In this document: positions 15,236-31,384 of the stretch, in pieces | How the letters are laid out: every line of letters begins with the position of its first letter | How positions within the stretch are numbered: position 1 is the first letter of the stretch | IMG/VR virus record: IMGVR_UViG_3300035698_035366 | Coordinates: 232,120 to 296,119 of that record | Reading direction: 5' to 3' (one strand) | Length of the DNA: 64,000 nt | Program-made: the position numbers and the translations under genes | The notes under the pieces: model-generated | Seen by the model: only the letters and a program-made list of their open reading frames with translations | Told to the model about the DNA's origin: nothing | The model's database searches: none

Positions 15236-15320
15236 GGGTGGCGCAGCTAATGCGATGTCTGGGACCGACGCGGGCTCTTAATCCGTGAACCAAGGGGTTC
15301 AATTCCCTCGCCACCCGCCA
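15236..15320 (+). tRNA. tRNA-Lys(CTT) with expanded D region
   Basis: gcggg-ctCTTaa-tccgt; gggtggc/gccaccc; ~25-nt D region. Confidence 0.7.
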
Positions 15321-15326
15321 ATTTAT

Positions 15327-15408
15327 CCCTGAGTGGCGGAACGGTATACGTAGCGAGCTTAAACCTCGTGGCTTCGGCATGTGAGTTCGACTCTCACCTT
15401 AGGGACCA
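15327..15408 (+). tRNA. tRNA-Leu(TAA)
   Basis: gcgag-ctTAAac-ctcgt; variable arm; CCA. Confidence 0.9.
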
Positions 15409-15418
15409 ATAAAATAAT

Positions 15419-15494
15419 GGACCGGTAGCTCAGAGGCAGTAGCGACGGGCTCTTAACCCGTAGGTCGAGATTTCGAAATTCTCCCGGTTCACCA
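15419..15494 (+). tRNA. tRNA-Lys(CTT)
   Basis: acggg-ctCTTaa-cccgt; CCA. Confidence 0.9.
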
Positions 15495-15545
15495 AAAATA
15501 TTGACATTAAACATAGATATGTGTATAGTTTATAAATACAAAATT

Positions 15546-15631
15546 GCCTGAGTGGCGGAACCGGTATACGCGAAGGTCTCAAAAACCTTTGTCCTTGCGG
15601 CATGTGAGTTCGAATCTCACCTCAGGCACCA
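15546..15631 (+). tRNA. tRNA-Leu(CAA)
   Basis: aaggt-ctCAAaa-acctt; CCA. Confidence 0.92.
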
Positions 15632-15674
15632 ATATATAAATTTAGGCAGGATTAATCCGTAAGTCCTATTTTAT

Positions 15675-15753
15675 GCCCGAGTGGTCAAATTGGTAAAGAC
15701 GTCCGCCTAAGAAGCGGAAGATTTTGTGGGTTCGAGTCCCACCTTGGGCACCA
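15675..15753 (+). tRNA. tRNA-Leu(AAG)
   Basis: tccgc-ctAAGaa-gcgga; A34 anticodon; CCA. Confidence 0.88.
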
Positions 15754-15850
15754 ATAGATTTTTGTTCGATTGTGCGGCTGGTCCCAAACAATCGTTCAAG
15801 AGAAGACCAGTTGAACGCAAACTGACCAGAGTGCGTTATTAAACTGGAGG

Positions 15851-15914
15851 CCGTCGTCTAAAAGAAAGGACGCCCCCGTTGAGGGGGAAATGGTGGGTGC
15901 GAGTCCCCTCGGCA
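15851..15914 (+). pseudogene. Degenerate tRNA-like element
   Basis: D-like tcgtctaa..ggac, ccccc-gttga-ggggg arm, gggtgcgagtccc T arm, short acceptor. Confidence 0.45.
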
Positions 15915-15939
15915 AAGTGCTTCTTACATAAATAGTTAT

Positions 15940-16164
15940 ATGAGATACGAACACATCATACAAGAAGAACCAGTTATATCAAGTTGGATTTCAGATCTAA
16001 CGTATGATGATGGTGACGTGATCATGGCATTAAATTCAGGGCGTGAATATCAAATACAAGATGTTCCGTTAGATGTTTATGAATCATGGATGGAATATGG
16101 TTCAAAAGGTCAATTTTGGCACGGGTATATCCGTGGTATGTACCAAGTTTGGCGAATTGCTTAA
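15940..16164 (+). CDS. KTSC domain protein
   Basis: SSWISDLTYD...SGREYQIQDVP..VYE.W....SKGQFW..IRG.Y. Confidence 0.88.
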   Translation: MRYEHIIQEEPVISSWISDLTYDDGDVIMALNSGREYQIQDVPLDVYESWMEYGSKGQFWHGYIRGMYQVWRIA

Positions 16165-16192
16165 ATTTACAATACAATTATACTTATACTGA

Positions 16193-16269
16193 TCCTAGCG
16201 GTCCCTGTCGGCAAGGGAGCGGCGCTGTTAACGCCGTTGTTCCAGGTTCGAGCCCTGGGCTAGGAGCCA
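16193..16269 (+). tRNA. tRNA-Asn(GTT)
   Basis: cggcg-ctGTTaa-cgccg; tcctagc/gctagga; G73-CCA. Confidence 0.85.
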
Positions 16270-16409
16270 AATTTGTTCAGACCTGATTTGCAAGTCAACT
16301 GAACATCGCTCGGACGATGGGCTTCATGAGCTTATCACATGCGAATTAAAATGGCTTTAACTGCGGCCGCGGTTGACTCCAGGAGATTTGCTTCCGAGCA
16401 ACCAATTAT

Positions 16410-16493
16410 GCGACGCGTAGGCGAGAAGGTTCTGCCGCTGGGCTTCCACCCCAGTCCGAAAGGTGTAGGGTTCGATTCCCTCGCGTCGCTCCA
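16410..16493 (+). tRNA. tRNA-Gly(TCC) with 8/4 fold and long variable arm
   Basis: gcgacgcg/cgcgtcgc 8-bp acceptor, 4-bp T stem aggg/ccct, ctggg-ctTCCac-cccag, U73-CCA. Confidence 0.75.
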
Positions 16494-16501
16494 ATATAAT
16501 T

Positions 16502-16660
16502 TTCTCTGTAGCTTAATGATCTTCATTGATGACGGTTCCGACGGGAACGGAATGAAGGCCGCAAGGCGTTGCAATGGTCTAGAACATTGTGTTAGTCGCC
16601 GATAAAAGGGCAGAGCGCCACCCGCGGAGGTTGGAGGTAGGGTTCAATTCCCTTAGAGAA
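16502..16660 (+). ncRNA. tRNA scaffold with ~90-nt structured insertion in the D loop
   Basis: ttctctg/tagagaa acceptor; tagcttaa...ggcagagc D arm split by an insert; agggttcaattccct T arm. Confidence 0.55.
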
Positions 16661-16668
16661 TTTAGTTT

Positions 16669-16742
16669 GCTCCTGTGATGTTCTGGGAACATATCCGGCT
16701 GTCTACCGGACGAGGTGGGTTCAATTCCCATCAGGAGCGCCA
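16669..16742 (+). tRNA. tRNA-Asp(GTC)
   Basis: tccgg-ctGTCta-ccgga; G73-CCA. Confidence 0.85.
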
Positions 16743-16745
16743 ATT

Positions 16746-16818
16746 GGGCGTGTGGTGAAGCGGTTAACACAGTGGATTGTCTATCCACCATTCGCAGGTT
16801 CAAGTCCTGTCACGCTCG
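16746..16818 (+). tRNA. tRNA-Asp(GTC)
   Basis: gtgga-ttGTCta-tccac. Confidence 0.87.
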
Positions 16819-16868
16819 CAAAGCTTAAATACTAAATAGTATATAATAATATTATTGAGGTTTAAATT

Positions 16869-17537
16869 ATGCGATTAAATGAAATAGACGCAAAACGTCC
16901 AGATCAAAGACATCCTGATGTAGAATACGAAGAGGTTCCAAAAAAGAAATCAGAACCTGATGTGATCGACAGCGTTATCGCATACCTTTCTGGCGGAGAA
17001 TCAGGAGCATACACAAAGCTTGCAAAAAGATTCAAAGATATAAAGGACGCTGAGGCGCAACTTATCGAGAATAAAAATAAATTAAATGCAGAACTAAAAG
17101 AAAACGTTGATAATTTATTTCCAGAAGCCGACGATATTTTTACAAGAGTTGTTGATACCGCGTCATTAGTTATTAAAATTGGGAAAGCAGAAAAAGCTCA
17201 CCAGATTGATAGATTTGATGCAGAAGGTTATATCAAAGAAATTGAAAAAATGTTTCCGGAGTTAACTGAATCTTTTAAAACAGTCCGTGAAAAATTTACC
17301 ACAGTTCAAGAGATTGCTGCAAAATCTCCCAAGCTTTTAACTCCCAAGTTGAAAGATAAAGGTGACGACAAGATTAAGAAAACAACAAAAACCGAAACCG
17401 TTATTTACGAAGGAATCGGCGAAAGATTTTCTCAGTATCTTCAAGCAGTTGCTAATAAAATCGGAAGGCTTCTTAGTAATTGGGACAAGAAATATGCAGA
17501 TATCAATTCAAGATTAGAATCTGCTATTGCAAATTAA
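16869..17537 (+). CDS. Hypothetical late protein (MRLNEI-type N-terminus)
   Basis: 222 aa; TAAATA motifs and RBS gagg upstream. Confidence 0.7.
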   Translation: MRLNEIDAKRPDQRHPDVEYEEVPKKKSEPDVIDSVIAYLSGGESGAYTKLAKRFKDIKDAEAQLIENKNKLNAELKENVDNLFPEADDIFTRVVDTASLVIKIGKAEKAHQIDRFDAEGYIKEIEKMFPELTESFKTVREKFTTVQEIAAKSPKLLTPKLKDKGDDKIKKTTKTETVIYEGIGERFSQYLQAVANKIGRLLSNWDKKYADINSRLESAIAN

Positions 17538-17560
17538 TCAAATACATATTATAATATTAT

Positions 17561-17650
17561 ACTTGGCGTAGCTCAGGGATGCTTGATAAGCAGGGTAGAG
17601 CAGCCGCGCGAGAACAGCGGTGTGACGGTGGTTCGAAACCATCCCCAAGT
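17561..17650 (+). ncRNA. tRNA-like RNA with a hairpin inserted in the D loop and a 9-nt anticodon loop
   Basis: tagctcag[ggatgcttgataagcag]ggtagagc; gccgc-gcgagaaca-gcggt; ggttcgaaacc. Confidence 0.55.
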
Positions 17651-17660
17651 ACAAAATAAT

Positions 17661-17739
17661 GCCCTTGTGGTCAAATTGGAAAAGGCGCTCGGTTTAGGTC
17701 CGAGAGATTTTGCAGGTTCGAGTCCTGCCAGGGGCACCA
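17661..17739 (+). tRNA. tRNA-Leu(TAG)
   Basis: ctcgg-ttTAGgt-ccgag; CCA. Confidence 0.9.
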
Positions 17740-17747
17740 GAAATTAT

Positions 17748-17821
17748 ATCCTTGAGGTCCAGGGAATGGACACCTCCTTGTCCGGGAGGAGATCACCACT
17801 TCGATGTGGTCAAGGATGCCA
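17748..17821 (+). tRNA. tRNA-Asp(GTC), divergent
   Basis: cctcc-ttGTCcg-ggagg; atccttg/caaggat; G73-CCA. Confidence 0.72.
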
Positions 17822-17902
17822 AGCTTAGAAGTGGATGGGAATTGACACCTTGTTACTCTCCCAGGTAATGTAGGATGCAAGCCACGCTAGGCGTAAAATT
17901 AT

Positions 17903-17980
17903 GCATCTGTATCCCTGTCCGCTGCGAACGGATTGAAAGGTAATTGGATCATGCACGTTCGAATCGTGTCAGGTGCGCCA
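17903..17980 (+). tRNA. tRNA-Arg(GCG) with D-loop displaced 3' of the anticodon arm
   Basis: gcatctg/caggtgc; only 7 nt before gtccg-ctGCGaa-cggat; taattgga after the arm; canonical T arm; CCA. Confidence 0.72.
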
Positions 17981-17990
17981 AAACAAATAG

Positions 17991-18147
17991 GTGAACGGTA
18001 GTAGCCTTTGATGTGCGGATGGAGTTCGATTCTCCTACTGGATGGGTTCGACTCCCACCCGGGCTTGGTTTAGCAAAACATCATACGCGAGAGCGTGTCG
18101 CGTCAACATTGGTCGATCCAACGGAAACCAAGGATTGAATGGCGCAC
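17991..18147 (+). ncRNA. Structured RNA with two tandem T-arm hairpins
   Basis: ggagttcgattctcc and gggttcgactccc side by side; tgatgt/acatca and cttggttt/aaaccaag pairings. Confidence 0.5.
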
Positions 18148-18158
18148 TTTTATTTTAT

Positions 18159-18237
18159 GCGTCTGTATGCCGCCGGTTTTCGAGACCGGAGAAAGCTAAC
18201 TGGACACATGCGGGTTCGACTCCTGCCAGGCGCGCCA
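18159..18237 (+). tRNA. tRNA-Arg(TCG) with D-loop displaced 3' of the anticodon arm
   Basis: gcgtctg/caggcgc; ccggt-ttTCGag-accgg; agctaactgga after the arm; CCA. Confidence 0.72.
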
Positions 18238-18253
18238 AGTTATAAATACTTAC

Positions 18254-18922
18254 ATGATATATAATGAATTATTAGAAGGCCGCGACGCATCACTTTGGCA
18301 TGGTATACAAATGAAGTATGCCCATGAGATTCTATCTAATATGAAAATAGAAGGTCGAACAACTCAAAGATATTGGCCTGACGGAATGCGGAGAAGAGAA
18401 GATGATCCAGACTATGAAGATAGCTTTTGGATGAAAGGCATTTCAACAACTCGTGATCCGTTATATGCATCTAGTTGGGGAAGCTTAGTTTTAGAATTAG
18501 ATCAAGCAGCGATAACACGGAATTACAAAATTGTTCCGTATAGCTGGGGATTCCATATGAAGGGTGCCAGCACTAAGAGAGAACGAGAAGAATTTATTAT
18601 TCTGTCGATGACTGGCAAGTCTATGAAAGATTATGAAAAAATATCAAATGATTCCATGCAAACTGATAACCCAACAAGTGCAATGAATTTATGGTATGCC
18701 CCAGAAGGAAAAGCATTAGATTTGAACAAATGCTTAAAAGGTGTATACATATCGGATTCAACATTTGAAATATATGGCGAAGATAATGATGAGATACAAT
18801 ACATCATGAAACATCCAAAATTCAAAGGATTGCTTCCAAGCACTATTCGTTCGGACAATCCAGAAAAGAAAGCTGCACGTAAAGAATTACGTGACCGAAT
18901 TAATAGTCAAATCAAAAATTAA
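18254..18922 (+). CDS. Hypothetical late protein (possible ADP-ribosyltransferase-like fold)
   Basis: LWHG...GISTTRD...EREEF pattern; leaderless after TATAAATA. Confidence 0.55.
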   Translation: MIYNELLEGRDASLWHGIQMKYAHEILSNMKIEGRTTQRYWPDGMRRREDDPDYEDSFWMKGISTTRDPLYASSWGSLVLELDQAAITRNYKIVPYSWGFHMKGASTKREREEFIILSMTGKSMKDYEKISNDSMQTDNPTSAMNLWYAPEGKALDLNKCLKGVYISDSTFEIYGEDNDEIQYIMKHPKFKGLLPSTIRSDNPEKKAARKELRDRINSQIKN

Positions 18923-18934
18923 ATTCTATATTAT

Positions 18935-19011
18935 GGTGAGCATGGTGTAGTGGTTGCACAACAGACTGTGACTCTGTTAGAGTTGGGTTCGATTCCCACT
19001 GTTCACCCCCA
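18935..19011 (+). tRNA. tRNA-His(GTG)
   Basis: acaga-ctGTGac-tctgt; G-1 and C73. Confidence 0.9.
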
Positions 19012-19068
19012 CAGTTTGACAACATGACAAATATACTGTATATTTATTTTGTAATTATATGGGATTGA

Positions 19069-19581
19069 ATGATGTCTACTGTTATTTGGTATAAAGGAAA
19101 ATTATATTCCGATAGTCGGGTTACGAATGACTTATTAAATACGGAAACAGGTGATCTAGTAGATAGAATAATTGGAAAAGGTAAGAAACTTTTCCGCCAT
19201 CCCAAGAAAAATAAAATTTATGGTGTTACTGGTACGCTTGAAGGATTCGCTGATTTCAAAAGTCGTGGATATAAAGGATCATTGCGCTGGGGTACTGAAT
19301 CTTCATCGAAAACTTTGGTCATTGAATGGGATGGCGAACATTTGATTGGATGGGTTTACAAGGAAAAATATATCAAATGGCTTAGGATTTACATTTCCAA
19401 GTTTGTAAAAACAAAATATAATTGGAAGGATGCTCCAGAATTCAAGATATCAATGGGATCTGGTACCGAATATGCTAGTGAAATGTTAGATTACGGGTGT
19501 TCAATTAGAGAAGCAATTCAATATGCATCGGATCGAGATGAATATACCGACGATGAAGTTGTTACGTTAGAATTAGAATAA
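19069..19581 (+). CDS. Ntn-hydrolase / proteasome-subunit-like phage protein
   Basis: N-terminal STVIW..GKLYSDSRVT, SMGSG..YA, AI.YA...D.YT pattern. Confidence 0.6.
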   Translation: MMSTVIWYKGKLYSDSRVTNDLLNTETGDLVDRIIGKGKKLFRHPKKNKIYGVTGTLEGFADFKSRGYKGSLRWGTESSSKTLVIEWDGEHLIGWVYKEKYIKWLRIYISKFVKTKYNWKDAPEFKISMGSGTEYASEMLDYGCSIREAIQYASDRDEYTDDEVVTLELE

Positions 19582-19582
19582 T

Positions 19583-19657
19583 GGTCTGTTAGTACAGTGG
19601 CTAGTACCCCCGCCTGATGAGCGGGTAACTCCAGTTCGAATCTGGAACGGACCACCA
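19583..19657 (+). tRNA. tRNA-Ile(GAT)
   Basis: cccgc-ctGATga-gcggg; CCA. Confidence 0.88.
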
Positions 19658-19681
19658 AAAAGGTTTGTAAGATAATCCTAT

Positions 19682-19751
19682 AGCGAGTTGGCCTGGGGCC
19701 GCGCAGTGTTTTGAGCTCTGCTGGGAGGGATCGTAACCTTCACCCGCTGCT
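19682..19751 (+). tRNA. Degenerate tRNA-Gln(TTG)-like
   Basis: gcagtg-ttTTGag-ctctgc; mini D arm; T-loop atcgtaa. Confidence 0.5.
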
Positions 19752-19760
19752 AAAATTTAT

Positions 19761-19834
19761 GGGCTTGTAGCTTAGTTGGCTAAAGCATTCGGTTGATAAC
19801 CGAAAGACCGCTGGTTCGAGTCCAGCCAGGCCCA
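19761..19834 (+). tRNA. tRNA-Ile(GAT)
   Basis: ttcgg-ttGATaa-ccgaa. Confidence 0.92.
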
Positions 19835-19851
19835 CCCAATTTTTTAATCAT

Positions 19852-19927
19852 GGTCTTGTAGTGTTAGCGGCAAGCACGCTGGTTTTGTATTCCAGTAGCC
19901 GGAGTTCGAATCTCCGCGGGACCTCCA
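19852..19927 (+). tRNA. tRNA-Thr(TGT)
   Basis: ctggt-ttTGTat-tccag; CCA. Confidence 0.82.
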
Positions 19928-19939
19928 ATTAGAAGCTTT

Positions 19940-20014
19940 GCCCTTAAAGCATATAAGGTGATGCACGGCTCCCGTAAAGCTGTGAACCACGTTCGAGTCG
20001 TGGTAAGGGCACCA
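19940..20014 (+). tRNA. tRNA-Thr(CGT)
   Basis: cggct-ccCGTaa-agctg; CCA. Confidence 0.82.
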
Positions 20015-20020
20015 ATTTAT

Positions 20021-20097
20021 TGCGGAGTGGAGCAGTGGTCAGCTCGTCGGTCTCATAAGCCGAAGGTCGAAGGTTCGAATCCTTCCTCACGCAACCA
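20021..20097 (+). tRNA. tRNA-fMet(CAT)
   Basis: tgcggagtggagcagtggtcagctcg initiator-type 5' half; ctCATaa; CCA. Confidence 0.88.
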
Positions 20098-20106
20098 AAC
20101 AAAAAT

Positions 20107-20187
20107 CCTCCGGCCGCTGGGACGGGTTGTGGTCTTCTAAGCCCTTGTCTTTGAACTAGCTAGGTTCGATTCCTAGACGGAGGACCA
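20107..20187 (+). tRNA. Atypical tRNA-Arg(TCT)
   Basis: ggt-ctTCTaa-gcc; mini D arm; long variable region; ctaggttcgattcctag; CCA. Confidence 0.6.
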
Positions 20188-20248
20188 ACAATTTGTTGAT
20201 TATTTTTCTATCATGTTGTATAGTAAATTCTTACTATAAGGAAATAAA

Positions 20249-20869: not shown

Positions 20870-20870
20870 T

Positions 20871-20940
20871 GCCTTGACCGACTGGACCGGAGTTTGGCCT
20901 CCTAAGCTAAAACCTGCAGGTTCGAATCCTGCTCAGGGCA
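20871..20940 (+). tRNA. tRNA-Arg(CCT), shortened D arm
   Basis: ttggc-ctCCTaa-gctaa; gcaggttcgaatcctgc. Confidence 0.75.
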
Positions 20941-21003
20941 CGAAAAATAACATTTGATAATGAAATAATAATATGTTAAATTATGTTTTGATAGGAGAAC
21001 AAA

Positions 21004-21417: not shown

Positions 21418-21418
21418 A

Positions 21419-22217: not shown

Positions 22218-23411
22218 ATGGATGCAAAACAGTTTATAGAGATCGGAAATACGGTGTTTGGTGTTGATACCCGTTGGGGTTCTAAGATGGCAACAGCCAT
22301 TGGTGTAACACCAGCCACTGTTTCGAATATCCGCACCGGTCGCGCCAACATTAGCGAAAAACTCACAAACCGTATCGCTGCACTGGTTGCAAATCGTAAA
22401 GTTGATACTGAAGGTGCAATTAGCTTCGCAGACACCGAAATTGCAGGCGATGCATGTTTTAAGCTTCGGCTTACAGCAACTGATCTTTCCAGCAATAAGT
22501 TTGTTAAGGTTGCTGATGTTAACCCGGCGCTGTTTTTCCCGCGCTTTGCTCCTGAGCCGCAGGTTATGGTTCAGCAGTTTGTCCAGGGTAGTAAGACTGC
22601 GCCGACGGCTTGCAGCGACGATAACCTGACAGACCAGGAAATTTTGGATCGAATTGGTAAGCGTGTTCGTGTTATGGACACCATTACCAACAGTGTTATT
22701 GCTGGTGATATTCCGAGCATGGTTGTTTACGGCGCCCCCGGGGTTGGAAAAAGCTACTCAGTTATGAAGGCGCTGAATGATACGGCGCGGTCGGATACGG
22801 AATTCAAGTTTGACGTGATCAAGGGTTCAGTAACAGCCGCTGGGCTTTACCGAGCACTGTTCAACCAGCGCAACGGCGGTATTGTTATGCTTGATGATTC
22901 GGATTCGATCTTCAAGGACGAGGAAAGCTTGAACCTCTTGAAGGCCGCTCTTGATAGCAGCGATGTTCGCCAGCTCAGCTGGAGGAAACAGTCTCGCTGG
23001 TTGGAAGAGCTTGCTGAAGAAAACGGTTTACGCCTGGAAGACGTCCAGGACTTTGAGTTTGAGGGTGGTGTAATTTTTATCACCAACATCAACCTCAAGG
23101 AGAAAGCACAGGCCGATTCGCGGATGTCACCGCATTACTCGGCTCTTATTAGCCGGTCGTTTTATGTGGACCTTACAACTGACAGTACCCGCGCCCGGTC
23201 CCTTCGTGTTAAGCAGGTGTTTGTTGACGGTACGATGGCAACGGCGCTTGGACTGGATGCGGATCAGGCGGAAGAGATTATGGAGTTTATTTCCGAGAAC
23301 AAGGATGAACTGATGGAAGTCAGCCTTCGGATGGCGAACTCAATTGCCAAGCTTTACCTGGCGGACGCTGACACTTGGAAAGAGATCGTCGAAGTGACGA
23401 AGATGAAATAA
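22218..23411 (+). CDS. HTH + AAA ATPase protein
   Basis: N-terminal HTH (MATAIGVTPATVSNIRTG); Walker A GAPGVGKS; Walker B VMLDD; IFITN. Confidence 0.85.
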   Translation: MDAKQFIEIGNTVFGVDTRWGSKMATAIGVTPATVSNIRTGRANISEKLTNRIAALVANRKVDTEGAISFADTEIAGDACFKLRLTATDLSSNKFVKVADVNPALFFPRFAPEPQVMVQQFVQGSKTAPTACSDDNLTDQEILDRIGKRVRVMDTITNSVIAGDIPSMVVYGAPGVGKSYSVMKALNDTARSDTEFKFDVIKGSVTAAGLYRALFNQRNGGIVMLDDSDSIFKDEESLNLLKAALDSSDVRQLSWRKQSRWLEELAEENGLRLEDVQDFEFEGGVIFITNINLKEKAQADSRMSPHYSALISRSFYVDLTTDSTRARSLRVKQVFVDGTMATALGLDADQAEEIMEFISENKDELMEVSLRMANSIAKLYLADADTWKEIVEVTKMK

Positions 23412-23980: not shown

Positions 23981-24055
23981 GGGGTACGCTCTGGGGAAGC
24001 GGTTTGCACCTGCAATGCGAATGTCTGCCGAATTCGATTTTCGGGTACTCCACCA
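23981..24055 (+). tRNA. tRNA-Ala(TGC), atypical
   Basis: G3:U70; ttgca-ccTGCaa-tgcga; CCA. Confidence 0.75.
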
Positions 24056-24120
24056 AATAACGCTTAATCAAGCGTTATATTGACTTGCATAATAAATATC
24101 GCTATAATAGAGGTATTAAT

Positions 24121-24717: not shown

Positions 24718-24722
24718 GAAAT

Positions 24723-24805
24723 GGAAGCTTAATTGGGCTGGGCCCGAGACCGCCTTGAAAGCGGATCGTACCGAGAGGTATGGGGTTCGATTCCTCAGGC
24801 TTCCG
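24723..24805 (+). tRNA. tRNA-Ser(TGA)
   Basis: ccgc-ctTGAaa-gcgg; long variable arm; G73. Confidence 0.87.
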
Positions 24806-24815
24806 CAGAATTTAT

Positions 24816-25168: not shown

Positions 25169-25256
25169 GGAAAGTAAATCTAGCAGGGTCTAGAGGGGGA
25201 TTGCTAATCCTTTCGCACTTGAAAAATAGTGTTCGGTTCGAGTCCGATGCTTTCCT
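25169..25256 (+). tRNA. tRNA-Ser(GCT)
   Basis: gggga-ttGCTaa-tcctt; long variable arm. Confidence 0.85.
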
Positions 25257-25260
25257 CAAA

Positions 25261-25377: not shown

Positions 25378-25393
25378 ACTTGCCCTTTACTTT

Positions 25394-25477
25394 GGACGAT
25401 AATCTTGGATGGGTCCAAGGACTGCCTCGAAAACAGATTGTACCGAAAGGTATCTGGTTCAATTCCAGTGTCGTCCG
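25394..25477 (+). tRNA. tRNA-Ser(CGA)
   Basis: ctgc-ctCGAaa-acag; variable arm taccgaaaggta; G73. Confidence 0.82.
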
Positions 25478-25490
25478 CACGAGGATTAAA

Positions 25491-25697: not shown

Positions 25698-25788
25698 TGC
25701 CGTCAGAACAAGTGTTCAGAGGGGTCTTATAAGCCCTTTCCACCAGATTAGTGGCTTTGGCTGGGAGCGTTACCCAGGGCGGCGACCA
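25698..25788 (+). tRNA. tRNA-Ile(TAT), atypical D arm, variable arm and T-loop
   Basis: ggggt-ctTATaa-gccct; D arm gaac-aagt-gttc; T-loop agcgtta; A73-CCA. Confidence 0.7.
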
Positions 25789-25859
25789 ACTAAGTAAATT
25801 CTTGTCTTATTGAAGAATAAAGTATAAATAATAAAAACACTTTATGCAAGGATTTCAAA

Positions 25860-26417
25860 ATGTCAAAAGAACTTAAAAAACATATGCGCACAATGCTTGA
25901 TCTAATGGAGGCTGATGTTACTCAGGGACCTTGGACTGGTCAAGGTGTTGGTCCGCAACAAGGTACAGGTAATATGTACAATATGACGACAGGACAGAAA
26001 GTCACTGGTCCAATGGATATGTCAAAGGCTGAAAAGCTAGATCTAGCTGATGTTTTTGGTGGCGATGAATATTCAACTATTAGAAAGCTCGGTTATACAT
26101 GGTTTGAAAAGCCAGGATATTTTAGTGATATTAAGGAGAAGACTTCCATTCCAAGAGGCGAGGTCGCCCGAGTTGAGCGTGCAATTGGTAGAAAATTAGA
26201 AAATGTTTACATGGGTGATTTAATAGTTCCATTTAAAGATGGGAATTATTATCCACAAGCTGATGCTGATTTTGAACGTTACCCAGAAGAAACTGTAATT
26301 GTCACTGTCAGTAAATGGGACGCAGAAGATAGCGATGAAGTTAGAGATGGTGATATATTTCTTGCAAACCGTACAGGTGCAAGCAAGTATTATCGTATGT
26401 GGATGCGCGTCATTTAA
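25860..26417 (+). CDS. Hypothetical late protein
   Basis: TATAAATA and RBS aagga upstream. Confidence 0.65.
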   Translation: MSKELKKHMRTMLDLMEADVTQGPWTGQGVGPQQGTGNMYNMTTGQKVTGPMDMSKAEKLDLADVFGGDEYSTIRKLGYTWFEKPGYFSDIKEKTSIPRGEVARVERAIGRKLENVYMGDLIVPFKDGNYYPQADADFERYPEETVIVTVSKWDAEDSDEVRDGDIFLANRTGASKYYRMWMRVI

Positions 26418-26429
26418 TCTCAAGTTTAT

Positions 26430-26503
26430 AGGGGGATAGTATAATGGTAGTGCAGCGGGTTCTGATCCCGCTGGTCGGGGTTCGATTCCCTGTCCCCCTG
26501 CCA
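26430..26503 (+). tRNA. tRNA-Gln(CTG)
   Basis: gcggg-ttCTGat-cccgc; CCA. Confidence 0.92.
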
Positions 26504-26688
26504 AATGAGAAAATTTATAATTATCTCAATATTTTGTTTTCTAACAAGCTGTACATCATATAGCCAATGTGCCAAGAATGGTGAAAATTGGGGGTATGTT
26601 TATGGTATATTTAAAACTAAAAATCCAGTTAAAATTAAAATCTATTCAATAGTAGGCCAAGAAATAGGTTCTAAATATTGCAAATAAC

Positions 26689-26760
26689 GCCGGTATAGTG
26701 ATAATGGTAGCACGAGGCATTGGTAATGCTTTAGTGGTGGTTCAATTCCTCCTATCGGCA
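26689..26760 (+). tRNA. tRNA-Thr(GGT)
   Basis: aggca-ttGGTaa-tgctt. Confidence 0.87.
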
Positions 26761-26872
26761 CTCAATTAAAAGGTTGACTAATGATGTAATCGTGTTATAA
26801 TAAAACATATTAAGGGAATGCCACGCGCCCATGCATATTGCAGAAAAACGTAAACTCCAATGGAGAAGCACA

Positions 26873-27607
26873 ATGGATCGAAAAGTTTGGAACATCGAAG
26901 AGTTTAACAAGGTTAATCTCCCCGAGGTTATTGGTTCAATAACCAATCGAAATAGATTCTCAGAATTTAACAGGACTCGCGTATTGGACCTGCCAATTCA
27001 TATGCCCGGGCAGGGATGGAAGATTCCATCCGAGATTAATAATTTCTTAGAACCAATCAAATTGGCTGCAAAAGCTGAAAGCCGCTTTGGTGATTTCCTA
27101 AACACTCATTACGTTTATGTGACAATTGATCAAAAGGTTGTCCAAGCCGGGAAGACTGGCCGTCGTGCTGGCGCCCATTCGGATGCCTATATAGAAGTAG
27201 ACGAAGAACAGCTTGATCTGATAGCTGAAAATGCTGATGCTATCGCTAAAGAAAAACAAGAAGTATCACATACATATGTTATTGCTGATCAAGTACCAAC
27301 GGAGTTTTTCAATGCGAAATTCCCGTTAGTGGATAGTTCATGCAACGGCGGATCATTAAAAACTTTTGATGAGATTGCAGAAAAAGCAGAAATAATAACG
27401 TATCCAGGATACACGTTGCTTCGTATGGATCCATATGTTGTTCACAGAAGCGCATTGGTTACAGAGACGATGGAACGAACATTTATGAAAATTAGCTTTT
27501 CGCGCAAAAAATATGCGAGGAAAGGAAATACAGTTAACCCAGGATTTGAATATGACTGGGAATTGACAGCGCGTTCACCTGATAAAAGAAATCATCCCTG
27601 GAAATAG
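26873..27607 (+). CDS. Putative 2OG-Fe(II) dioxygenase
   Basis: H-S-D ... VVHRS ... RTFMKISFS pattern; start 26873 after ggag. Confidence 0.55.
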   Translation: MDRKVWNIEEFNKVNLPEVIGSITNRNRFSEFNRTRVLDLPIHMPGQGWKIPSEINNFLEPIKLAAKAESRFGDFLNTHYVYVTIDQKVVQAGKTGRRAGAHSDAYIEVDEEQLDLIAENADAIAKEKQEVSHTYVIADQVPTEFFNAKFPLVDSSCNGGSLKTFDEIAEKAEIITYPGYTLLRMDPYVVHRSALVTETMERTFMKISFSRKKYARKGNTVNPGFEYDWELTARSPDKRNHPWK

Positions 27608-27662
27608 ATAGATAACTATACAATAATATTGTATACTGTTATCTTAATATAGGAGCGTTATT

Positions 27663-28526
27663 ATGACAGGATACACAACAAGAATTGCACCAAGCCCAAC
27701 GGGTGATATGCACCTGGGGACCGCTCGCACGGCTTATTTCAATTGGCTGATGGCTCGAGCATCAGGTGGTAAATTCATTCTTCGTATTGATGATACTGAT
27801 CTCGCAAGGAACGATCAGAAACATATTGATATTATTCTAGAGACAATGGAGTGGCTTGGGTTAACTTATGATGAGCTAGAATATCAGAGCAAACGTATCG
27901 ATGTGTATTATCGAGCAACAAATGATCTTGTCAAAAAGGGATTTACGACTACATTAGAGAATGGTGCAATTGCTGTTAATCTATCTTCTGTGATTGATTT
28001 CCCAACCACATGGCGCGATGAGATTTCAGGTGATATTAATATCACATCAACCAACCACGATCAAACAGATGGTATGATTCTTATTAAAGGAAATGGATAT
28101 CCGGGTTACAATTGGGCTTCGGTGGTTGATGATGTTGATCTTGGTGTAGATTATATTATTCGAGGCCATGATCATATCACAAACACTTCAAGCCAAGCAA
28201 TTCTTTATAAGTTACTAGATAAGCCATTGCCCAAATTTGCGCATGTTGGTTTAATTCACGCCAATAAAAAGAAAATGTCCAAGCGTGATGGTGCTGCGAG
28301 TATGATGCAGTATAAAGCCGATGGGTATGATCCAGACGCATTGTTGAATTTTATGCTTCGTCTTGGATGGGGGCCAACTATCGACGATAAAACGACTAAG
28401 ACTATTGACAAGGATCGTGCATTAGAGTTGTTTATTAATGGTGGACGAATGCGATCCGCCCCATCAAATTTAGATACAGCAATGCTAAATTCATATGATA
28501 GAAAATATAAGGCTAGAAAGAAATAA
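27663..28526 (+). CDS. Minimal glutamyl-tRNA synthetase-like protein (catalytic domain only; GluQ-RS-like)
   Basis: RIAPSPTGDMHLGTARTA, LRIDDTD, IRGHDH, KMSKR; 287 aa, no Zn-cysteine cluster, no anticodon-binding domain. Confidence 0.88.
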   Translation: MTGYTTRIAPSPTGDMHLGTARTAYFNWLMARASGGKFILRIDDTDLARNDQKHIDIILETMEWLGLTYDELEYQSKRIDVYYRATNDLVKKGFTTTLENGAIAVNLSSVIDFPTTWRDEISGDINITSTNHDQTDGMILIKGNGYPGYNWASVVDDVDLGVDYIIRGHDHITNTSSQAILYKLLDKPLPKFAHVGLIHANKKKMSKRDGAASMMQYKADGYDPDALLNFMLRLGWGPTIDDKTTKTIDKDRALELFINGGRMRSAPSNLDTAMLNSYDRKYKARKK

Positions 28527-28541
28527 TCTAGCCTTAGATCG

Positions 28542-28612
28542 ATGAGCCGAAGGTTTAGGGTTATCATTTTGACTTCTAATCAAACCAACACCCTTTTCCA
28601 CTCCTTGCTCAT
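28542..28612 (+). ncRNA. Minimal Y RNA-like RNA carrying an Arg(TCT) anticodon stem-loop
   Basis: atgagcCGAAGG/CCTTgctcat stem; gggttatcat shared with 23841; tttga-ctTCTaa-tcaaa. Confidence 0.7.
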
Positions 28613-28950
28613 TCTTAATAGGAAAAATAAATGAACATCGACGATATGATAAAACTAATTCGGCCAATACATAACGATATTTGTATTCTTTATGATACTA
28701 ATTTGGTTCGAGTTGTTGGTGTGGCTGAAGATGAAAGGGATTTGTATTATATTGTTCGAGATTTGGAACATCGAGATCATCCAGAACACTGGGCATCTGC
28801 GGTTGGGCATATTGTCAGCCTGAATGGGATTTACCCTGAAGAGCGATATAAACATATGGATGATGTATTTCGGATGAATGGTGCAGAAAGAAGTGAAGAA
28901 TTTATTGTTATCGTAGAAGAATAAGAGTTGTTCTTCTGACTAAATACGAT

Positions 28951-29361
28951 ATGTCATACAAAATTAGATACATACCGAATCTCATCGCGGCTCTTATAAC
29001 CAACACCATCGAGCCACCACCAGATAGAATGGTTGAGATACAAGAATGGTATGATCATATCAAAAAAAGCATATTAGAAGAAGGTTTCCGCAATCCCGTT
29101 GTCTTAACAGCAAAAGACGGTAAACTGGAACCACGTTATGGTGGTACAAGGGTTAAAATTGCACAAGAACACGGAATGAAAATACCAGCTATTATTGCAG
29201 ATTTTGATGATCAATTTCCCGAAGCTGAAACATTGGAAACATGGGAAGTTCCAGATAAATTCCTAGACAAACCAAAGAAAATACTCTTTAAGACCTATGG
29301 AATCAATGCTTCGGGCTTACCTGATACCGTAGAAGAATTCAATAAAAAACTTGACAAATAG
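28951..29361 (+). CDS. ParB/Srx-like domain protein
   Basis: SILEEGFRNPVVL...GGTRVKIA. Confidence 0.7.
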   Translation: MSYKIRYIPNLIAALITNTIEPPPDRMVEIQEWYDHIKKSILEEGFRNPVVLTAKDGKLEPRYGGTRVKIAQEHGMKIPAIIADFDDQFPEAETLETWEVPDKFLDKPKKILFKTYGINASGLPDTVEEFNKKLDK

Positions 29362-29409
29362 ATAAAACACTATACAATAGTTATTGTAATTATATAGAAA
29401 GATCGTATC

Positions 29410-30519
29410 ATGCGTATTGGAGAAATCGTAACGGTAGTTGTTTTTGTGTTTTTCATGTGTATCTCATATGGAGCAAACGCAACTGTAATCGGACAGAGCG
29501 AAGGCTTGTCTTTTATCAAAGCCGCCAATAACGCTCGCAGCGGGACGACAATGGATTTCCGCCAGCTTCAGAATTTTTTTAGCCCGACACAGGGAAACGA
29601 TAACCAGATTTTGAGCCGCACCGAAGCTCTTCTGGCGGAACTTGATGACGATGACAGCATCAAGCGGATATCGGTGATCGCAACCTTAATGCTTGAATCA
29701 GGAAAGGTTTATGAAGCCAACATTACAAACGGCTATCAGCTTTCCGTTGATAGCACGGGTTGGGATTTTGGTCCCAACGGTTCGCCTGTTCATAAGGATT
29801 TCCGTAAAGTAACTGAACATGATGTGGTATCTAGCGGATACGCTGTAAGCGATAACGATCTCGTTGACGGTCTTTCTGGAGTTCGAAATTTCTCAGATCG
29901 CGCAATCAACGGTGTTTATACTGTAACAGTCGTGTTTACTGGTCGGGATACGAAATTCGATACATTTGAAATTAATGGGTCTAACGTGATCGTTCGAAAC
30001 GTTAGTGAGATATCTAACCGTTTGGATATGACGAAACCAGGAGATGAGAAACTGCACAAGTCAATTGCAATTCGAACTTGGACAGTTGTAACTGAAAATC
30101 AGCTTAATGTTGCTTTCCCGAAGTTTCCTGAAAATTCCGTATTGTCGGCAATCATTATTACTCCAGTCAACATGCTACAGGTAATTGACCGTCGAGTTGA
30201 GGATTTGATCGACTCTCGCAAGCCGTTCGTGTACAATGCTGGTGGGTTTGGATCACGTAATGGATTTGATTATGGCATATCCCGATATTTTGCATACTCT
30301 AAGGATGGGTTCATCTCTACCCGAGGCCATGGTGGTTGCTGTAGTATCCCAGGCGATGATGGGCCATACGACGTACCGGTGTTTGTTCCTGGCGGAGACG
30401 GTGACCCAACCGATGTTCCAGGTATTACCATTCCAGGTACCGTTCCGGAACCCGGTGCGCTTGCACTATTCGGAATCGGCATTATTGGATTATTAATTAC
30501 TCGTCGTAGGAAAAAATAA
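29410..30519 (+). CDS. Secreted PEP-CTERM protein
   Basis: N-terminal signal peptide; C-terminal VPEPGALALFGIGIIGLLITRRRKK. Confidence 0.9.
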   Translation: MRIGEIVTVVVFVFFMCISYGANATVIGQSEGLSFIKAANNARSGTTMDFRQLQNFFSPTQGNDNQILSRTEALLAELDDDDSIKRISVIATLMLESGKVYEANITNGYQLSVDSTGWDFGPNGSPVHKDFRKVTEHDVVSSGYAVSDNDLVDGLSGVRNFSDRAINGVYTVTVVFTGRDTKFDTFEINGSNVIVRNVSEISNRLDMTKPGDEKLHKSIAIRTWTVVTENQLNVAFPKFPENSVLSAIIITPVNMLQVIDRRVEDLIDSRKPFVYNAGGFGSRNGFDYGISRYFAYSKDGFISTRGHGGCCSIPGDDGPYDVPVFVPGGDGDPTDVPGITIPGTVPEPGALALFGIGIIGLLITRRRKK

Positions 30520-30794
30520 TGTTTTACCTTTATTATGAAATATTTATAGGGCTCAAATCCGAACCTGAATATTATGTTGATAGCCATGAAGGTCCTGGGC
30601 TGTTTACTTTTACTAGAAAACGTGGTTCACTCAATACTACACAAATGGCTCATCGTATATGGGAACAGAACAGTGAAGATGGCTCTGTGAGATATCTAAA
30701 AAATAAATTAACAGAAGATCTAATTGTTGATATTGAAGAATTTAAAATAGTAAAATTATCAGCGTCAGAAGTATCACACGATTCTTTCAGGTAA
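30519..30794 (+). CDS. Hypothetical protein (paralog of 30801)
   Basis: Shared RIW.Q..DGS...LKN...VDIEEFKI.KLSASE. Confidence 0.7.
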   Translation: MFYLYYEIFIGLKSEPEYYVDSHEGPGLFTFTRKRGSLNTTQMAHRIWEQNSEDGSVRYLKNKLTEDLIVDIEEFKIVKLSASEVSHDSFR

Positions 30795-30800
30795 AAATAA

Positions 30801-31058
30801 ATGATAACATTATATTTTGAGATGCCAACAACTTGGGGTAGAGATCATATTGATTTCCTATATTACTATAAGGAAACTTCTAAATATTTAATTGAACCAT
30901 TACATTCTGTCCCGTTGGGTTATTCATATAAATCAACCCGTATATGGTTACAAAAAGAAGATGGTTCAATAATGTTTCTAAAGAATAGACATTCCGGACA
31001 CCAAACGGTTGATATTGAAGAATTTAAGATAATAAAATTATCAGCATCAGAAATTTAA
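30801..31058 (+). CDS. Hypothetical protein (paralog of 30519)
   Basis: Shared C-terminal motif. Confidence 0.7.
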   Translation: MITLYFEMPTTWGRDHIDFLYYYKETSKYLIEPLHSVPLGYSYKSTRIWLQKEDGSIMFLKNRHSGHQTVDIEEFKIIKLSASEI

Positions 31059-31127
31059 TTTATTACTTGACATTATCTAACAACTCTGTTAGTATAAATA
31101 ATACAAACAAACAAGGAGATTATTATC

Positions 31128-31157
31128 ATGTTTAAGAGACTCAAACACAAACGATAA
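31128..31157 (+). CDS. Lys/Arg-rich leader peptide MFKRLKHKR upstream of the tRNA-Lys cluster
   Basis: TTGACA and TATAAATA promoters, strong RBS aaggag; stop codon lies in a switchable hairpin. Confidence 0.65.
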   Translation: MFKRLKHKR

Positions 31158-31204
31158 TAACTCTAGGCCCGCGATCCTAGAGTTGTTGTTGAATAGCAAT
31201 TTTA

Positions 31205-31290
31205 GGATCATGCAGCATAATCGGCAGGCTGGGCCGCCAAGGGACTTTTAACCCCTCGCTTAAAAGGTTCGATTCCTTCTTGATCCTCCA
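31205..31290 (+). tRNA. tRNA-Lys(TTT) with expanded D region
   Basis: aggga-ctTTTaa-cccct; ggatca/tgatcc; CCA. Confidence 0.68.
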
Positions 31291-31301
31291 GATTAAATTC
31301 T

Positions 31302-31384
31302 GGACGGGTGACCCGAGTGGCGATGGGCCTGGACTCTTAATCCAGTATTATACACCGTGGGTTCGAATCCCACCTCGTCCACCA
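31302..31384 (+). tRNA. tRNA-Lys(CTT) on a class-II-like body
   Basis: ctgga-ctCTTaa-tccag; long variable loop; CCA. Confidence 0.8.

What the first reader, a model, noticed from the sequence alone, without database searches (positions are those of the whole stretch)
15236..31384. Lys tRNAs on four different bodies, two sharing an expanded D region
SEEN: 15236 (CTT) and 31205 (TTT) share an enlarged gcagc...ctggg.cc D region. 31302 has a class-II-like body with a CTT anticodon, 15419 is near canonical and 31395 is interrupted. INFERENCE: strong diversifying pressure on tRNA-Lys, consistent with it being a prime target of anti-phage nucleases.
Basis: partly seen in the sequence, partly recalled or inferred. 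Interest (0 to 1): 0.6.

Follow-up and report, generated by a model that had tools for sequence, protein, structure and literature searches.

The report
Odd-shaped lysine tRNAs in a jumbo phage
A 296-kb phage carries five lysine tRNA genes, and two of them have a rare, conserved non-standard fold that standard tRNA finders miss; these two probably still read lysine codons, and whether the fold protects them from bacterial tRNA-cutting defences is untested.

Summary
The window is the last 64 kb of a 296-kb phage genome from a salt-lake metagenome.

- **Five Lys-anticodon genes on three scaffolds.**
  - 15419 (CUU) is canonical.
  - 31395 is its paralog, with a 51-nt insert in the anticodon loop and no CCA.
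  - 31302 (CUU) has an 11-nt variable loop.
  - 15236 (CUU) and 31205 (UUU) share a fold missed by ARAGORN and by the Rfam tRNA model.
- **The shared fold.** It is an "8/4" tRNA: 8-bp acceptor stem, 4-bp T stem, and a 6-bp D stem with a UGG loop. An extra 8-10-nt loop sits between the acceptor and D stems.
- **Conservation.** Three more members, all with Lys anticodons, lie in two other phage-like tRNA arrays. Sequences are 48-65% identical, yet 95.6% of pair cells stay paired and 18 of 23 pairs show compensatory changes.
- **Closest known.** The (8/4) "E-loop" tRNAs of Mukai et al. 2017.
- **Context.** 8/4 Ser (three), Tyr and Gly tRNAs occur in the same array, so odd shapes are not specific to Lys.
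- **Function.** Most likely these are working Lys decoders; 31205 is the phage's only intact AAA reader.

Nuclease evasion is plausible (the phage has RNA-repair genes) but untested. The conserved scaffold argues against rapid diversification.

The parts
15236..15320 (+). E-loop (8/4) tRNA with anticodon CUU. Layout: GGGUGGCG | CAGCUAAU | GCG-AU-GUC UGG GAC CG(A)C | GCGGG CUCUUAA UCCGU | GAACCAA | GGGG UUCAAUU CCCU | CGCCACCC | G CCA.
   Evidence: Sequence. Acceptor and 8-65 pairing. R1 covariance model 88.9 bits. Covariation. Not found by ARAGORN or the Rfam tRNA model.
15419..15494 (+). Canonical 7/5 tRNA-Lys(CUU), A73, CCA encoded.
   Evidence: ARAGORN; Rfam tRNA 49.4 bits.
31205..31290 (+). 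E-loop (8/4) tRNA with anticodon UUU, the only intact AAA reader in the genome. Layout: GGAUCAUG | CAGCAUAAUC | GGC-A-GGC UGG GCC GCC | A | AGGGA CUUUUAA CCCCU | CGCUUAA | AAGG UUCGAUU CCUU | CUUGAUCC | U CCA.
   Evidence: Sequence. Constrained folding gives the bulged 6-bp D hairpin. R1 93.2 bits. Covariation. Codon use AAA 2777 against AAG 1448.
31302..31384 (+). 7/5 tRNA-Lys(CUU) with a 3-bp D stem and an 11-nt variable loop, A73, CCA encoded.
   Evidence: ARAGORN drawing; Rfam tRNA 49.1 bits; table.
31395..31520 (+). Paralog of 15419 interrupted in the anticodon loop. It has G1.U72 and ends in ACUA, so no CCA is encoded. If the insert were removed exactly, the loop would read CUUUUAA (UUU).
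   Evidence: ARAGORN -i; alignment by eye with 15419; read laying joints; fold.
31429..31479 (+). The 51-nt insert. It is single-copy in the genome and folds as a 5-bp stem enclosing two small hairpins. No Rfam family matches it.
   Evidence: blastn against the genome and RNAfold; Rfam at E<=10. An uninterrupted allele (GCGG-UCUCU-UAAUCCGC, anticodon CUU) appears in contigs of two other runs.
13486..13570 (+). 8/4 tRNA-Tyr(GUA) from the same non-canonical set, missed by ARAGORN. An ortholog sits next to the E-loop Lys gene in L021.
16410..16493 (+). 8/4 tRNA-Gly(UCC) with the same 3 bp - bulge - 3 bp D stem but only a 2-nt connector. It is the best non-Lys match to model R1.
   Evidence: ARAGORN; tRNA-Sec model 41.4 bits; R1 40.6 bits.
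24723..24808 (+). 8/4-type tRNA-Ser(UGA) with a 6-bp D stem and UGG loop, missed by ARAGORN. In this gene 49-65 can also pair, so the 8/4 reading is ambiguous.
   Evidence: tRNA-Sec model 43.2 bits with alignment.
25169..25259 (+). 8/4 tRNA-Ser(GCU), missed by ARAGORN.
25394..25480 (+). 8/4 tRNA-Ser(CGA) with a 6-bp D stem and UGGG loop, missed by ARAGORN.

Best explanation
15236 (CUU) and 31205 (UUU) are genuine, structurally constrained non-canonical tRNAs.

**Shown: the fold.**
- An 8-bp acceptor stem plus a 4-bp T stem keeps the usual 12-bp coaxial branch.
- The D stem is tRNASec-like: 6 bp, often with a 1-2-nt bulge, closed by a UGG or UGGU loop.
- The variable loop is short.
- An extra 8-10-nt loop (consensus C-R-S-C-(N)-U-A-A-K) lies between the acceptor and D stems.

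**Shown: the family.** They belong to a small family that carries both Lys anticodons. It occurs in the tRNA arrays of one phage lineage that also uses 8/4 bodies for Ser, Tyr and Gly.

**Inferred: the function.**
- They are processed and used as elongator tRNAs for Lys codons.
- Class II LysRS reads mainly the anticodon, which is intact.
- EF-Tu, RNase P and the CCA enzyme read the 12-bp branch, which is preserved.
- 31205 would supply AAA decoding, for which the phage has no other intact tRNA.

**More weakly inferred: the driver.** The rebuilt D side changes the face read by nucleases that recognise the tRNA body. Keeping Lys on three scaffolds would then hedge against tRNA-directed host defences.

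**31395.** It is most likely a copy inactivated by a recent 51-nt insertion.
For: **Architecture and conservation**
- Five members in three contigs are only 48-65% identical.
- 95.6% of pair cells stay paired, and 18 of 23 pairs change on both sides. No shuffle of 500 reaches this, and slid controls give 43-48% pairing.
- Pair 8-65 is G-C four times and A-U once, whereas 49-65 pairs in only 1 of 5.
- The fifth member was found by the model without being part of it.
- The MFE folds of L021 and L018-2 reproduce the proposed cloverleaf.

**tRNA hallmarks**
- U33, A37, a UUCRAUU T loop, GG in the D loop, and an encoded CCA in 4 of 5 members.
- Same strand and spacing as neighbouring tRNAs.

**Both isoacceptors kept.** CUU and UUU lie in tandem on this scaffold in L018.

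**Need for decoding.** AAA is 66% of Lys codons, and 31205 is the only intact UUU gene.

**Lineage.** L021 shares the 8/4 Tyr gene and L018 shares the odd Trp gene with the window.

**Precedent.** 8/4 tRNAs translate in E. coli, and phages use 8/4 Ser and His tRNAs (PMC5389517).

**Defence context**
- Rnl1-type ligase, a kinase-phosphoesterase and a CCA-adding enzyme are encoded in the genome.
- AriB needs D-loop U16.
Against: - There are no expression, processing or charging data. Only DNA runs hold this phage.
- The discriminator is G or U, not the A73 found in the phage's own canonical Lys tRNAs (and, from my own knowledge, in bacterial tRNA-Lys generally).
- The only E-loop 8/4 tRNA tested so far was not charged by E. 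coli GlyRS or ThrRS.
- The fold of the extra loop itself is unresolved, because the weak 2-bp options differ between members.
- The host and its tRNA-Lys are unknown, so no comparison at nuclease recognition sites is possible.
- The family is rare: no further members in IMG/VR or in GTDB genomes.
Confidence: 0.55

Rival explanations
1. tRNA-Lys in this phage is under diversifying selection from anticodon nucleases, and each body is a separate escape variant.
For: - Five Lys genes serve two codons, and three CUU genes serve the minor codon.
- RNA-repair genes are present.
- tRNA-Lys is a documented target of PARIS, and phage T5 supplies a resistant copy (PMC11464382, PMC12409363).
Against: - The E-loop scaffold is conserved with compensatory changes across three arrays, which points to purifying rather than diversifying selection.
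- The same structural heterodoxy affects Ser, Tyr, Gly, Leu and Arg genes.
- The anticodon loops are all canonical.
- No PrrC/RloC-type or Schlafen-type gene was found in the phage, and no host is known.
Confidence: 0.25
2. The E-loop RNAs are tRNA-shaped but not used in translation. They would act as decoys that soak up a nuclease or modification enzyme, or as regulatory RNAs.
For: - The discriminator is not A73.
- Standard tRNA models fail on them.
- The extra loop carries UAAU, the motif found next to the AriB cut site. This may well be coincidence.
Against: - A strictly canonical anticodon loop with both Lys anticodons is kept in all five members.
- The CCA is encoded.
- The 12-bp branch is preserved.
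- 31205 is the only AAA reader.
Confidence: 0.13
3. They are charged with an amino acid other than Lys and so recode AAA/AAG in part, as proposed for some allo-tRNAs.
For: - G73 or U73 instead of A73.
- Precedent of 8/4 tRNAs whose identity is independent of the anticodon.
Against: - They lack the long variable arm needed for Ser identity, G3:U70 needed for Ala identity, and G-1 needed for His identity.
- No phage aaRS other than a truncated GluRS-like protein was found.
- Lys codons are used at ordinary frequency.
Confidence: 0.05
4. They are decaying pseudogenes or chance tRNA-like sequences.
For: - The gene finders miss them.
- Single-sequence folding z-scores are unremarkable (-0.9 and 0.06).
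- 31395 next door does look broken.
Against: - Covariation in all four helices.
- Independent recovery of a fifth member.
- Intact loops and CCA.
Confidence: 0.02

Closest known systems
(8/4) tRNA with an extra loop ('E-loop' tRNA1) from Acidobacteria-like polycistrons (Mukai et al. 2017, PMC5389517; review PMC7609411)
   Same: 8/4 acceptor/T branch, and an extra loop between the acceptor stem and the D stem.
   Different: - The described one has anticodon GCU and U73, comes from soil metatranscriptomes near toxin-antitoxin genes, and was uncharged by E. coli GlyRS and ThrRS.
- These carry CUU or UUU, sit in phage tRNA arrays, and come as an isoacceptor pair.
- I could not see that paper's figure or supplement, so detailed identity of the D arm and loop length is not verified.
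(8/4) tRNASer and tRNAHis of phages, and allo-tRNAs (Mukai et al. 2017)
   Same: - 8-bp acceptor plus 4-bp T stem, and a long D stem with a small loop.
- Occurrence in phage tRNA clusters.
- The same window has three 8/4 Ser genes.
   Different: Allo-tRNA and tRNASer have a long variable arm and a 2-nt connector. The Lys genes have a 7-nt variable region and an 8-10-nt connector.
tRNASec (Rfam RF01852)
   Same: A 6-bp D stem with a tiny loop, and an extended acceptor stem.
   Different: - tRNASec has a 13-bp branch (8/5 or 9/4), a long variable arm and anticodon UCA.
- 15236 scores only 19.6 bits against a gathering score of 47.
Phage T5 tRNALys(UUU), which neutralises PARIS (AriB)
   Same: A phage-encoded Lys tRNA kept alongside the host's. 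Nuclease resistance depends on the anticodon stem and also on the D loop.
   Different: - The T5 tRNA is a canonical cloverleaf with point differences (U39A, A41C, U16C).
- Here the whole D side is rebuilt.
- No nuclease test exists for these genes.
T4 Pnkp + Rnl1 repair of PrrC-cut tRNALys (from my own knowledge)
   Same: The genome encodes an Rnl1-family ligase and a kinase-phosphoesterase.
   Different: - The phosphatase here is a metallophosphoesterase fused to a P-loop kinase, not the T4 HAD type; no PNK3P domain was found.
- The link to Lys is an inference.

Membership tests
(8/4) non-canonical tRNA | 12-bp acceptor branch made of an 8-bp acceptor stem and a 4-bp T stem | tested here: met
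   Pair 8-65 is formed in 5 of 5 members (G-C four times, A-U once). Pair 49-65 is formed in 1 of 5. All 8 acceptor pairs and 3 of 4 T pairs covary.
(8/4) non-canonical tRNA | tRNASec-like D arm: long stem with a 3-4-nt loop | tested here: met
   6-bp stem (with a 1-2-nt bulge in 4 of 5 members) plus a UGG or UGGU loop. 4 of 6 pairs change on both sides.
E-loop subgroup of (8/4) tRNAs | Extra loop between the acceptor stem and the D stem | tested here: met
   8-10 unpaired nt in all five members, against 2 nt in the window's 8/4 Ser and Gly genes.
allo-tRNA sensu stricto | Long variable arm (Ser-type identity) | tested here: not met
   The variable region is 7 nt with no stem.
Elongator tRNA-Lys | Anticodon UUU or CUU in a 7-nt loop with U33 and A37 | tested here: met
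   CU[C/U]UUAA in all five members.
Elongator tRNA-Lys | Discriminator A73 | tested here: not met
   G73 in three members and U73 in two. The window's canonical Lys genes have A73.
Elongator tRNA-Lys | Charged by LysRS and used at Lys codons | not testable with these tools
   Only DNA runs hold the phage. No LysRS is encoded in the phage.
Canonical tRNA (Rfam RF00005 / ARAGORN) | Reaches the family's gathering score or the program's default threshold | tested here: not met
   No RF00005 match at E<=10. ARAGORN finds them only at -ps80, and then with a wrong acceptor stem.
tRNASec (RF01852) | Gathering score of 47 bits and anticodon UCA | tested here: not met
   19.6 bits for 15236, no hit for 31205, and anticodons CUU and UUU.
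Phage anti-defence tRNA (T5 tRNALys type) | Resists a tRNA-Lys nuclease and rescues infection | not testable with these tools
   The host and its defences are unknown. Only circumstantial RNA-repair genes are seen.
Intron-containing tRNA (for 31395) | Group I intron or bulge-helix-bulge intron in the anticodon loop | tested here: not met
   The insert is 51 nt. No Rfam intron or ribozyme match at E<=10. The fold shows no bulge-helix-bulge. No RtcB in the genome.

The most novel reading that the evidence does not exclude
The 8/4 + E-loop body is a dedicated, nuclease-proof chassis for tRNA-Lys. A jumbo-phage lineage would maintain it for both isoacceptors so that Lys decoding survives host, or phage-inflicted, destruction of canonical tRNA-Lys. 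This would be the first case of counter-defence by rebuilding the tRNA body rather than by point changes in the anticodon arm.
Probability: 0.25. Interest if true: 0.8.

Novelty: new member of a known kind. Interest (0 to 1): 0.55.

Why it matters
- **Annotation gap.** Standard tRNA finders miss at least seven intact-looking tRNA genes in this one window: both E-loop Lys genes, three Ser, Tyr and Trp. The phage's decoding capacity, including its only AAA reader, is therefore under-counted.
- **A wider role for the fold.** E-loop 8/4 tRNAs were known from one obscure, apparently inactive example. Here they form a conserved pair of Lys isoacceptors in phage arrays. That makes them testable as working tRNAs.
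- **A test of defence evasion.** They offer a natural experiment on whether tRNA body shape, not only the anticodon loop, lets phages escape tRNA-cutting defences.
- **A possible tool.** The scaffold may be useful as an orthogonal tRNA chassis.

Tried and rejected
- **Near relatives.** Megablast and blastn against 50,697 phage records gave no relatives. The blastn searches with 15236 and 31205 matched only the 3' halves of other phage tRNA genes (Lys and Gly).
- **Pattern scans.**
  - Four scans of IMG/VR for family members and one of GTDB genomes found no further members.
  - The five matches failed the covariance model.
  - Three metagenome matches (L014, L016, L023) had no acceptor stem and were dropped.
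- **Synteny route.**
  - The GluRS-like neighbour gave no related loci.
  - Homologs of the AAA ATPase at 22218-23411 lie on short contigs without Lys genes.
- **Tunturiibacter phage Tunturi_5.** It shares one Leu tRNA at 88% identity but has no E-loop genes in the 40 kb examined.
- **Folding.**
  - Single-sequence thermodynamics is uninformative (z between -2.9 and +1.4).
  - Two alternative D-arm folds were weighed: a 3-bp stem with a 6-7-nt loop, and a 6-bp bulged stem with a UGG loop. The second was kept because L018 and L021 fit only that one.
- **The extra loop.** Pairing between it and the variable loop is not consistent across members. Reading its UAAU/CAUAAU as an internal -10 promoter box was rejected because the spacing to the nearest -35-like hexamer is 21 nt.
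- **31302.** Descent from a class II Leu gene was rejected. The shared GAGTGGCG lies at non-homologous positions, and no close paralog exists.
- **The 51-nt insert.** It is not a repeat within the genome. The uninterrupted allele is not in IMG/VR.
- **RNA evidence.** No RNA run holds the phage, so expression and splicing could not be examined.

Full report
**Setting.** The window is the last 64 kb of a single 296,119-bp virus record with 38% G+C. The record is a jumbo phage assembled from a salt-lake metagenome (contig Ga0222664_1000004). It has no close relative among 50,697 phage records. ARAGORN tRNA genes, all on the + strand between 12.7 and 47 kb, and only two of them are Lys. Rfam gives 28 tRNA matches at gathering score.

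**Check of the observation.**
- 15419-15494 is an ordinary tRNA-Lys(CUU).
- 31302-31384 is a tRNA-Lys(CUU) of 83 nt with a 3-bp D stem and an 11-nt variable loop that forms no credible stem. It is class-II-like in length only.
- 31395-31520 has the acceptor, D and T arms of 15419 but carries 51 extra nt (31429-31479) inside the anticodon loop. It has G1.U72 and lacks an encoded CCA.
- 15236-15320 (CUU) and 31205-31290 (UUU) are invisible to default ARAGORN and to the Rfam tRNA model even at E<=10.
  - Both have good acceptor stems (perfect in 15236, one U.U mismatch in 31205), canonical anticodon and T loops and an encoded CCA.
  - Both have 27-28 nt where 18-22 nt normally separate the acceptor and anticodon stems.

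**What the two odd genes are.**
- In both, base 8 (G) pairs with base 65 (C), while base 49 (A) cannot pair with 65. The acceptor stem therefore has 8 bp and the T stem 4 bp.
- The D region contains a hairpin of two 3-bp blocks separated by a 1-2-nt bulge and closed by UGG. In 31205 it reads GGC-A-GGC UGG GCC GCC.
- This hairpin is preceded by 8-10 unpaired nt, CAGC(A)UAAU(C).
- A pattern taken from features shared by the two genes was scanned over 241 million metagenome records.
  - Besides the phage's own contig, it found two independent contigs that are dense tRNA arrays. Each holds a UUU gene with the same layout: L018:2086-2169 and L021:70-152.
- A covariance model built from these four sequences then found a fifth member that was not used to build it. 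This is L018:2224-2308 (CUU, 68.9 bits, E 2e-19), 55 nt upstream of the first L018 gene.
- The five sequences are only 48-65% identical, yet the structure holds.
  - 95.6% of pair cells form standard pairs.
  - 18 of 23 pairs change on both sides.
  - No shuffle of 500 reaches the observed values, and slid controls give 43-48% pairing.
  - Pair 8-65 itself covaries (G-C four times, A-U once).
- The MFE folds of L021 and L018-2 reproduce the proposed cloverleaf unaided.
- All five members carry Lys anticodons.

**Context in the same array.** A scan for T arms followed by a search for acceptor partners shows that ARAGORN misses many further tRNA-like genes.
- Several of the array's tRNA genes are 8/4.
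  - Ser(UGA) at 24723 scores 43 bits on the tRNA-Sec model.
  - Ser(GCU) lies at 25169, Ser(CGA) at 25394 and Tyr(GUA) at 13486.
  - The ARAGORN-called Gly(UCC) at 16410 has the same bulged 6-bp D stem but a 2-nt connector.
- Other oddities:
  - Leu genes with short variable regions.
  - Two Arg-like genes without a normal D arm.
  - A gene with a hairpin inserted in the D loop.
  - A 136-nt element with three T-arm-like hairpins.
- L021 carries an ortholog of the 8/4 Tyr gene, and L018 an ortholog of the unusual Trp gene. The three arrays therefore belong to one phage lineage with a shared non-canonical tRNA set.

**Comparison with what is known.**
- Mukai et al. (PMC5389517) described tRNAs with 8/4 and 9/3 branches. 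They reported 8/4 tRNASer and tRNAHis in phage tRNA clusters. They also reported '(8/4) tRNA1 with an extra loop (E-loop)' in Acidobacteria-like polycistrons.
- A later review states that this loop lies between the acceptor stem and the D stem (PMC7609411).
- That E-loop tRNA had anticodon GCU and U73, and was not charged by E. coli GlyRS or ThrRS.
- The Lys genes here meet the 8/4, long-D-stem and E-loop criteria. They lack the long variable arm of allo-tRNAs and do not reach the tRNASec score.
- I therefore file them as new members of the E-loop (8/4) kind. They differ from the described example by their Lys anticodons, their phage setting and their occurrence as an isoacceptor pair.
- I could not inspect the published figure or supplement.

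**How they most likely work.**
- Shown: a conserved fold, canonical anticodon loops, a preserved 12-bp acceptor branch, and an encoded CCA in 4 of 5 members.
- Inferred: they are processed and serve as elongator tRNAs.
  - From my own knowledge, class II LysRS relies chiefly on the anticodon.
  - From my own knowledge, EF-Tu, RNase P and the CCA enzyme rely on the acceptor branch.
  - 8/4 tRNAs are active on E. coli ribosomes.
- AAA makes up 66% of the phage's Lys codons, and 31205 is its only intact UUU tRNA. This argues for function.
- Against this, the discriminator is G or U rather than A73, and no RNA data exist.

**The defence hypothesis.**
- Points in favour:
  - Five Lys genes serve two codons, with three CUU copies for the minor codon.
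  - An Rnl1-family RNA ligase and a P-loop kinase-metallophosphoesterase fusion are encoded elsewhere in the genome, together with a CCA-adding enzyme. This resembles the T4 toolkit against PrrC.
  - AriB of PARIS cleaves E. coli tRNALys(UUU) and needs D-loop U16 as well as U39 and A41. A rebuilt D side could therefore abolish recognition.
- Points against the strong form:
  - The scaffold is ancient and under structural constraint rather than diversifying.
  - Non-canonical bodies and duplicate bodies are spread over many amino acids.
  - The anticodon loops are unchanged.
  - The host and its defences are unknown.
  - The phage itself shows no PrrC/RloC-type or Schlafen-type nuclease.
- I rate nuclease evasion as the driver at about one in four.

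**The interrupted gene.**
- The 51-nt insert is single-copy in the genome. It folds into a small three-way structure inside an otherwise intact cloverleaf.
- It matches no Rfam intron or ribozyme and shows no bulge-helix-bulge. The genome has no RtcB.
- Contigs from two other runs of the same lake series join 31423 to 31480 with UCUCU between them.
  - This is an uninterrupted tRNA-Lys(CUU) whose flanks match 31395 better than they match 15419.
  - The insertion is therefore polymorphic and probably recent.
  - The evidence is thin: each side of the joint is only 24-26 letters, and depth is low.
- With G1.U72 and no CCA, a recently disrupted copy is the simplest reading. A new kind of small intron is not excluded.

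**Verdict.** There are three scaffolds, one of which is a conserved (8/4) E-loop fold found so far only with Lys anticodons in this phage lineage. The inference of Lys-specific diversifying pressure is only partly supported.

Noticed in passing
G000:C1 about 11076-12383 and 13999-15300 (outside the window; loci L045, L047): RNA-repair pair: a T4 Rnl1-family RNA ligase (PF09511, 95-97 bits) and a 433-aa P-loop kinase (AAA_33) fused to a calcineurin-like phosphoesterase. A ClpP protease gene lies just upstream.
   Followed up: partly
window 24723-24808, 25169-25259, 25394-25480, 13486-13570, 13397-13476: Five tRNA genes missed by ARAGORN. They are three 8/4-type tRNA-Ser (UGA, GCU, CGA), an 8/4 tRNA-Tyr(GUA) with an unusual AUCGAUA T loop, and a tRNA-Trp(CCA) with an odd D region and a 10-nt variable loop. 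They fill amino acids otherwise absent from the phage's set.
   Followed up: partly
window 17903-17980 and 18159-18237: Two paralogous tRNA-like genes with perfect acceptor stems, G73 and CCA. Their anticodon-type loops read GCG and UCG (Arg). They have no normal D arm. Instead, a 4-bp stem encloses the anticodon hairpin plus an A-rich GAAAGNUAA stretch. Only the second reaches the Rfam tRNA model (31 bits).
   Followed up: no
window 14847-14982: A 136-nt element with a tRNA-like acceptor stem (GAGGUAG/AUACCUC, one mismatch), A73 and CCA. It encloses three successive T-arm-like hairpins (GGCGG UUCGACU CCGUC; GUGG UUCGAGU CCAC; UAAGG UUCAACU CCUUA). No Rfam family matches it.
   Followed up: no
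window 17561-17654, 20107-20187 and 23981-24055: Three further irregular tRNA-like genes.
- 17561 has a hairpin inserted in the D loop and a 9-nt anticodon loop.
- 20107 has a weak anticodon stem (UCU).
- 23981 is 75 nt long with the loop CCUGCAA, which has C33, so Ala or Cys is unclear.
   Followed up: no
window 15675-15753 and 17661-17739: tRNA-Leu(AAG) and tRNA-Leu(UAG) of 76 nt with only a 7-nt variable region, which is class-I-like for Leu. A second Leu(AAG) at 32724 has a long arm, so the same anticodon sits on two bodies, as with Gly(UCC).
   Followed up: no
window 27663-28526: A 287-aa protein made only of a GluRS-type class I catalytic domain (Pfam tRNA-synt_1c, 210 bits). It scores below the cut-offs for both gltX and GluQRS. 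A homolog lies beside three tRNA-Glu genes in the related contig L005.
   Followed up: partly
window 31423-31480 (read laying, runs X3 and X5): Low-depth contigs from other samples of the lake series carry an uninterrupted version of the 31395 gene with anticodon CUU. The 51-nt insert is therefore polymorphic in related phage populations.
   Followed up: partly
window 29410-30519; 36366-37424; 5280-6221; 47757-48965: Bacterial-type genes inside the phage:
- a protein ending in a PEP-CTERM sorting motif, a hint that the host is a Gram-negative with an exosortase;
- a DAO-family FAD oxidoreductase sitting between tRNA genes;
- a PAS-domain protein;
- an S41 peptidase with a PDZ domain.
   Followed up: no
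L006:3368-4568: A related metagenomic contig, which shares the AAA ATPase of window 22218-23411 at 52% identity, encodes a Thg1-family protein and a cytidine/adenosine deaminase next to each other. These are further tRNA-handling genes in this phage group.
   Followed up: no
window 31159-31184: A 9-bp GC-rich hairpin lies just upstream of the 31205-31520 Lys cluster and downstream of a 9-codon ORF. A promoter-like site lies at 31067-31095. The hairpin may be a terminator or a processing signal that sets off the cluster.
   Followed up: no
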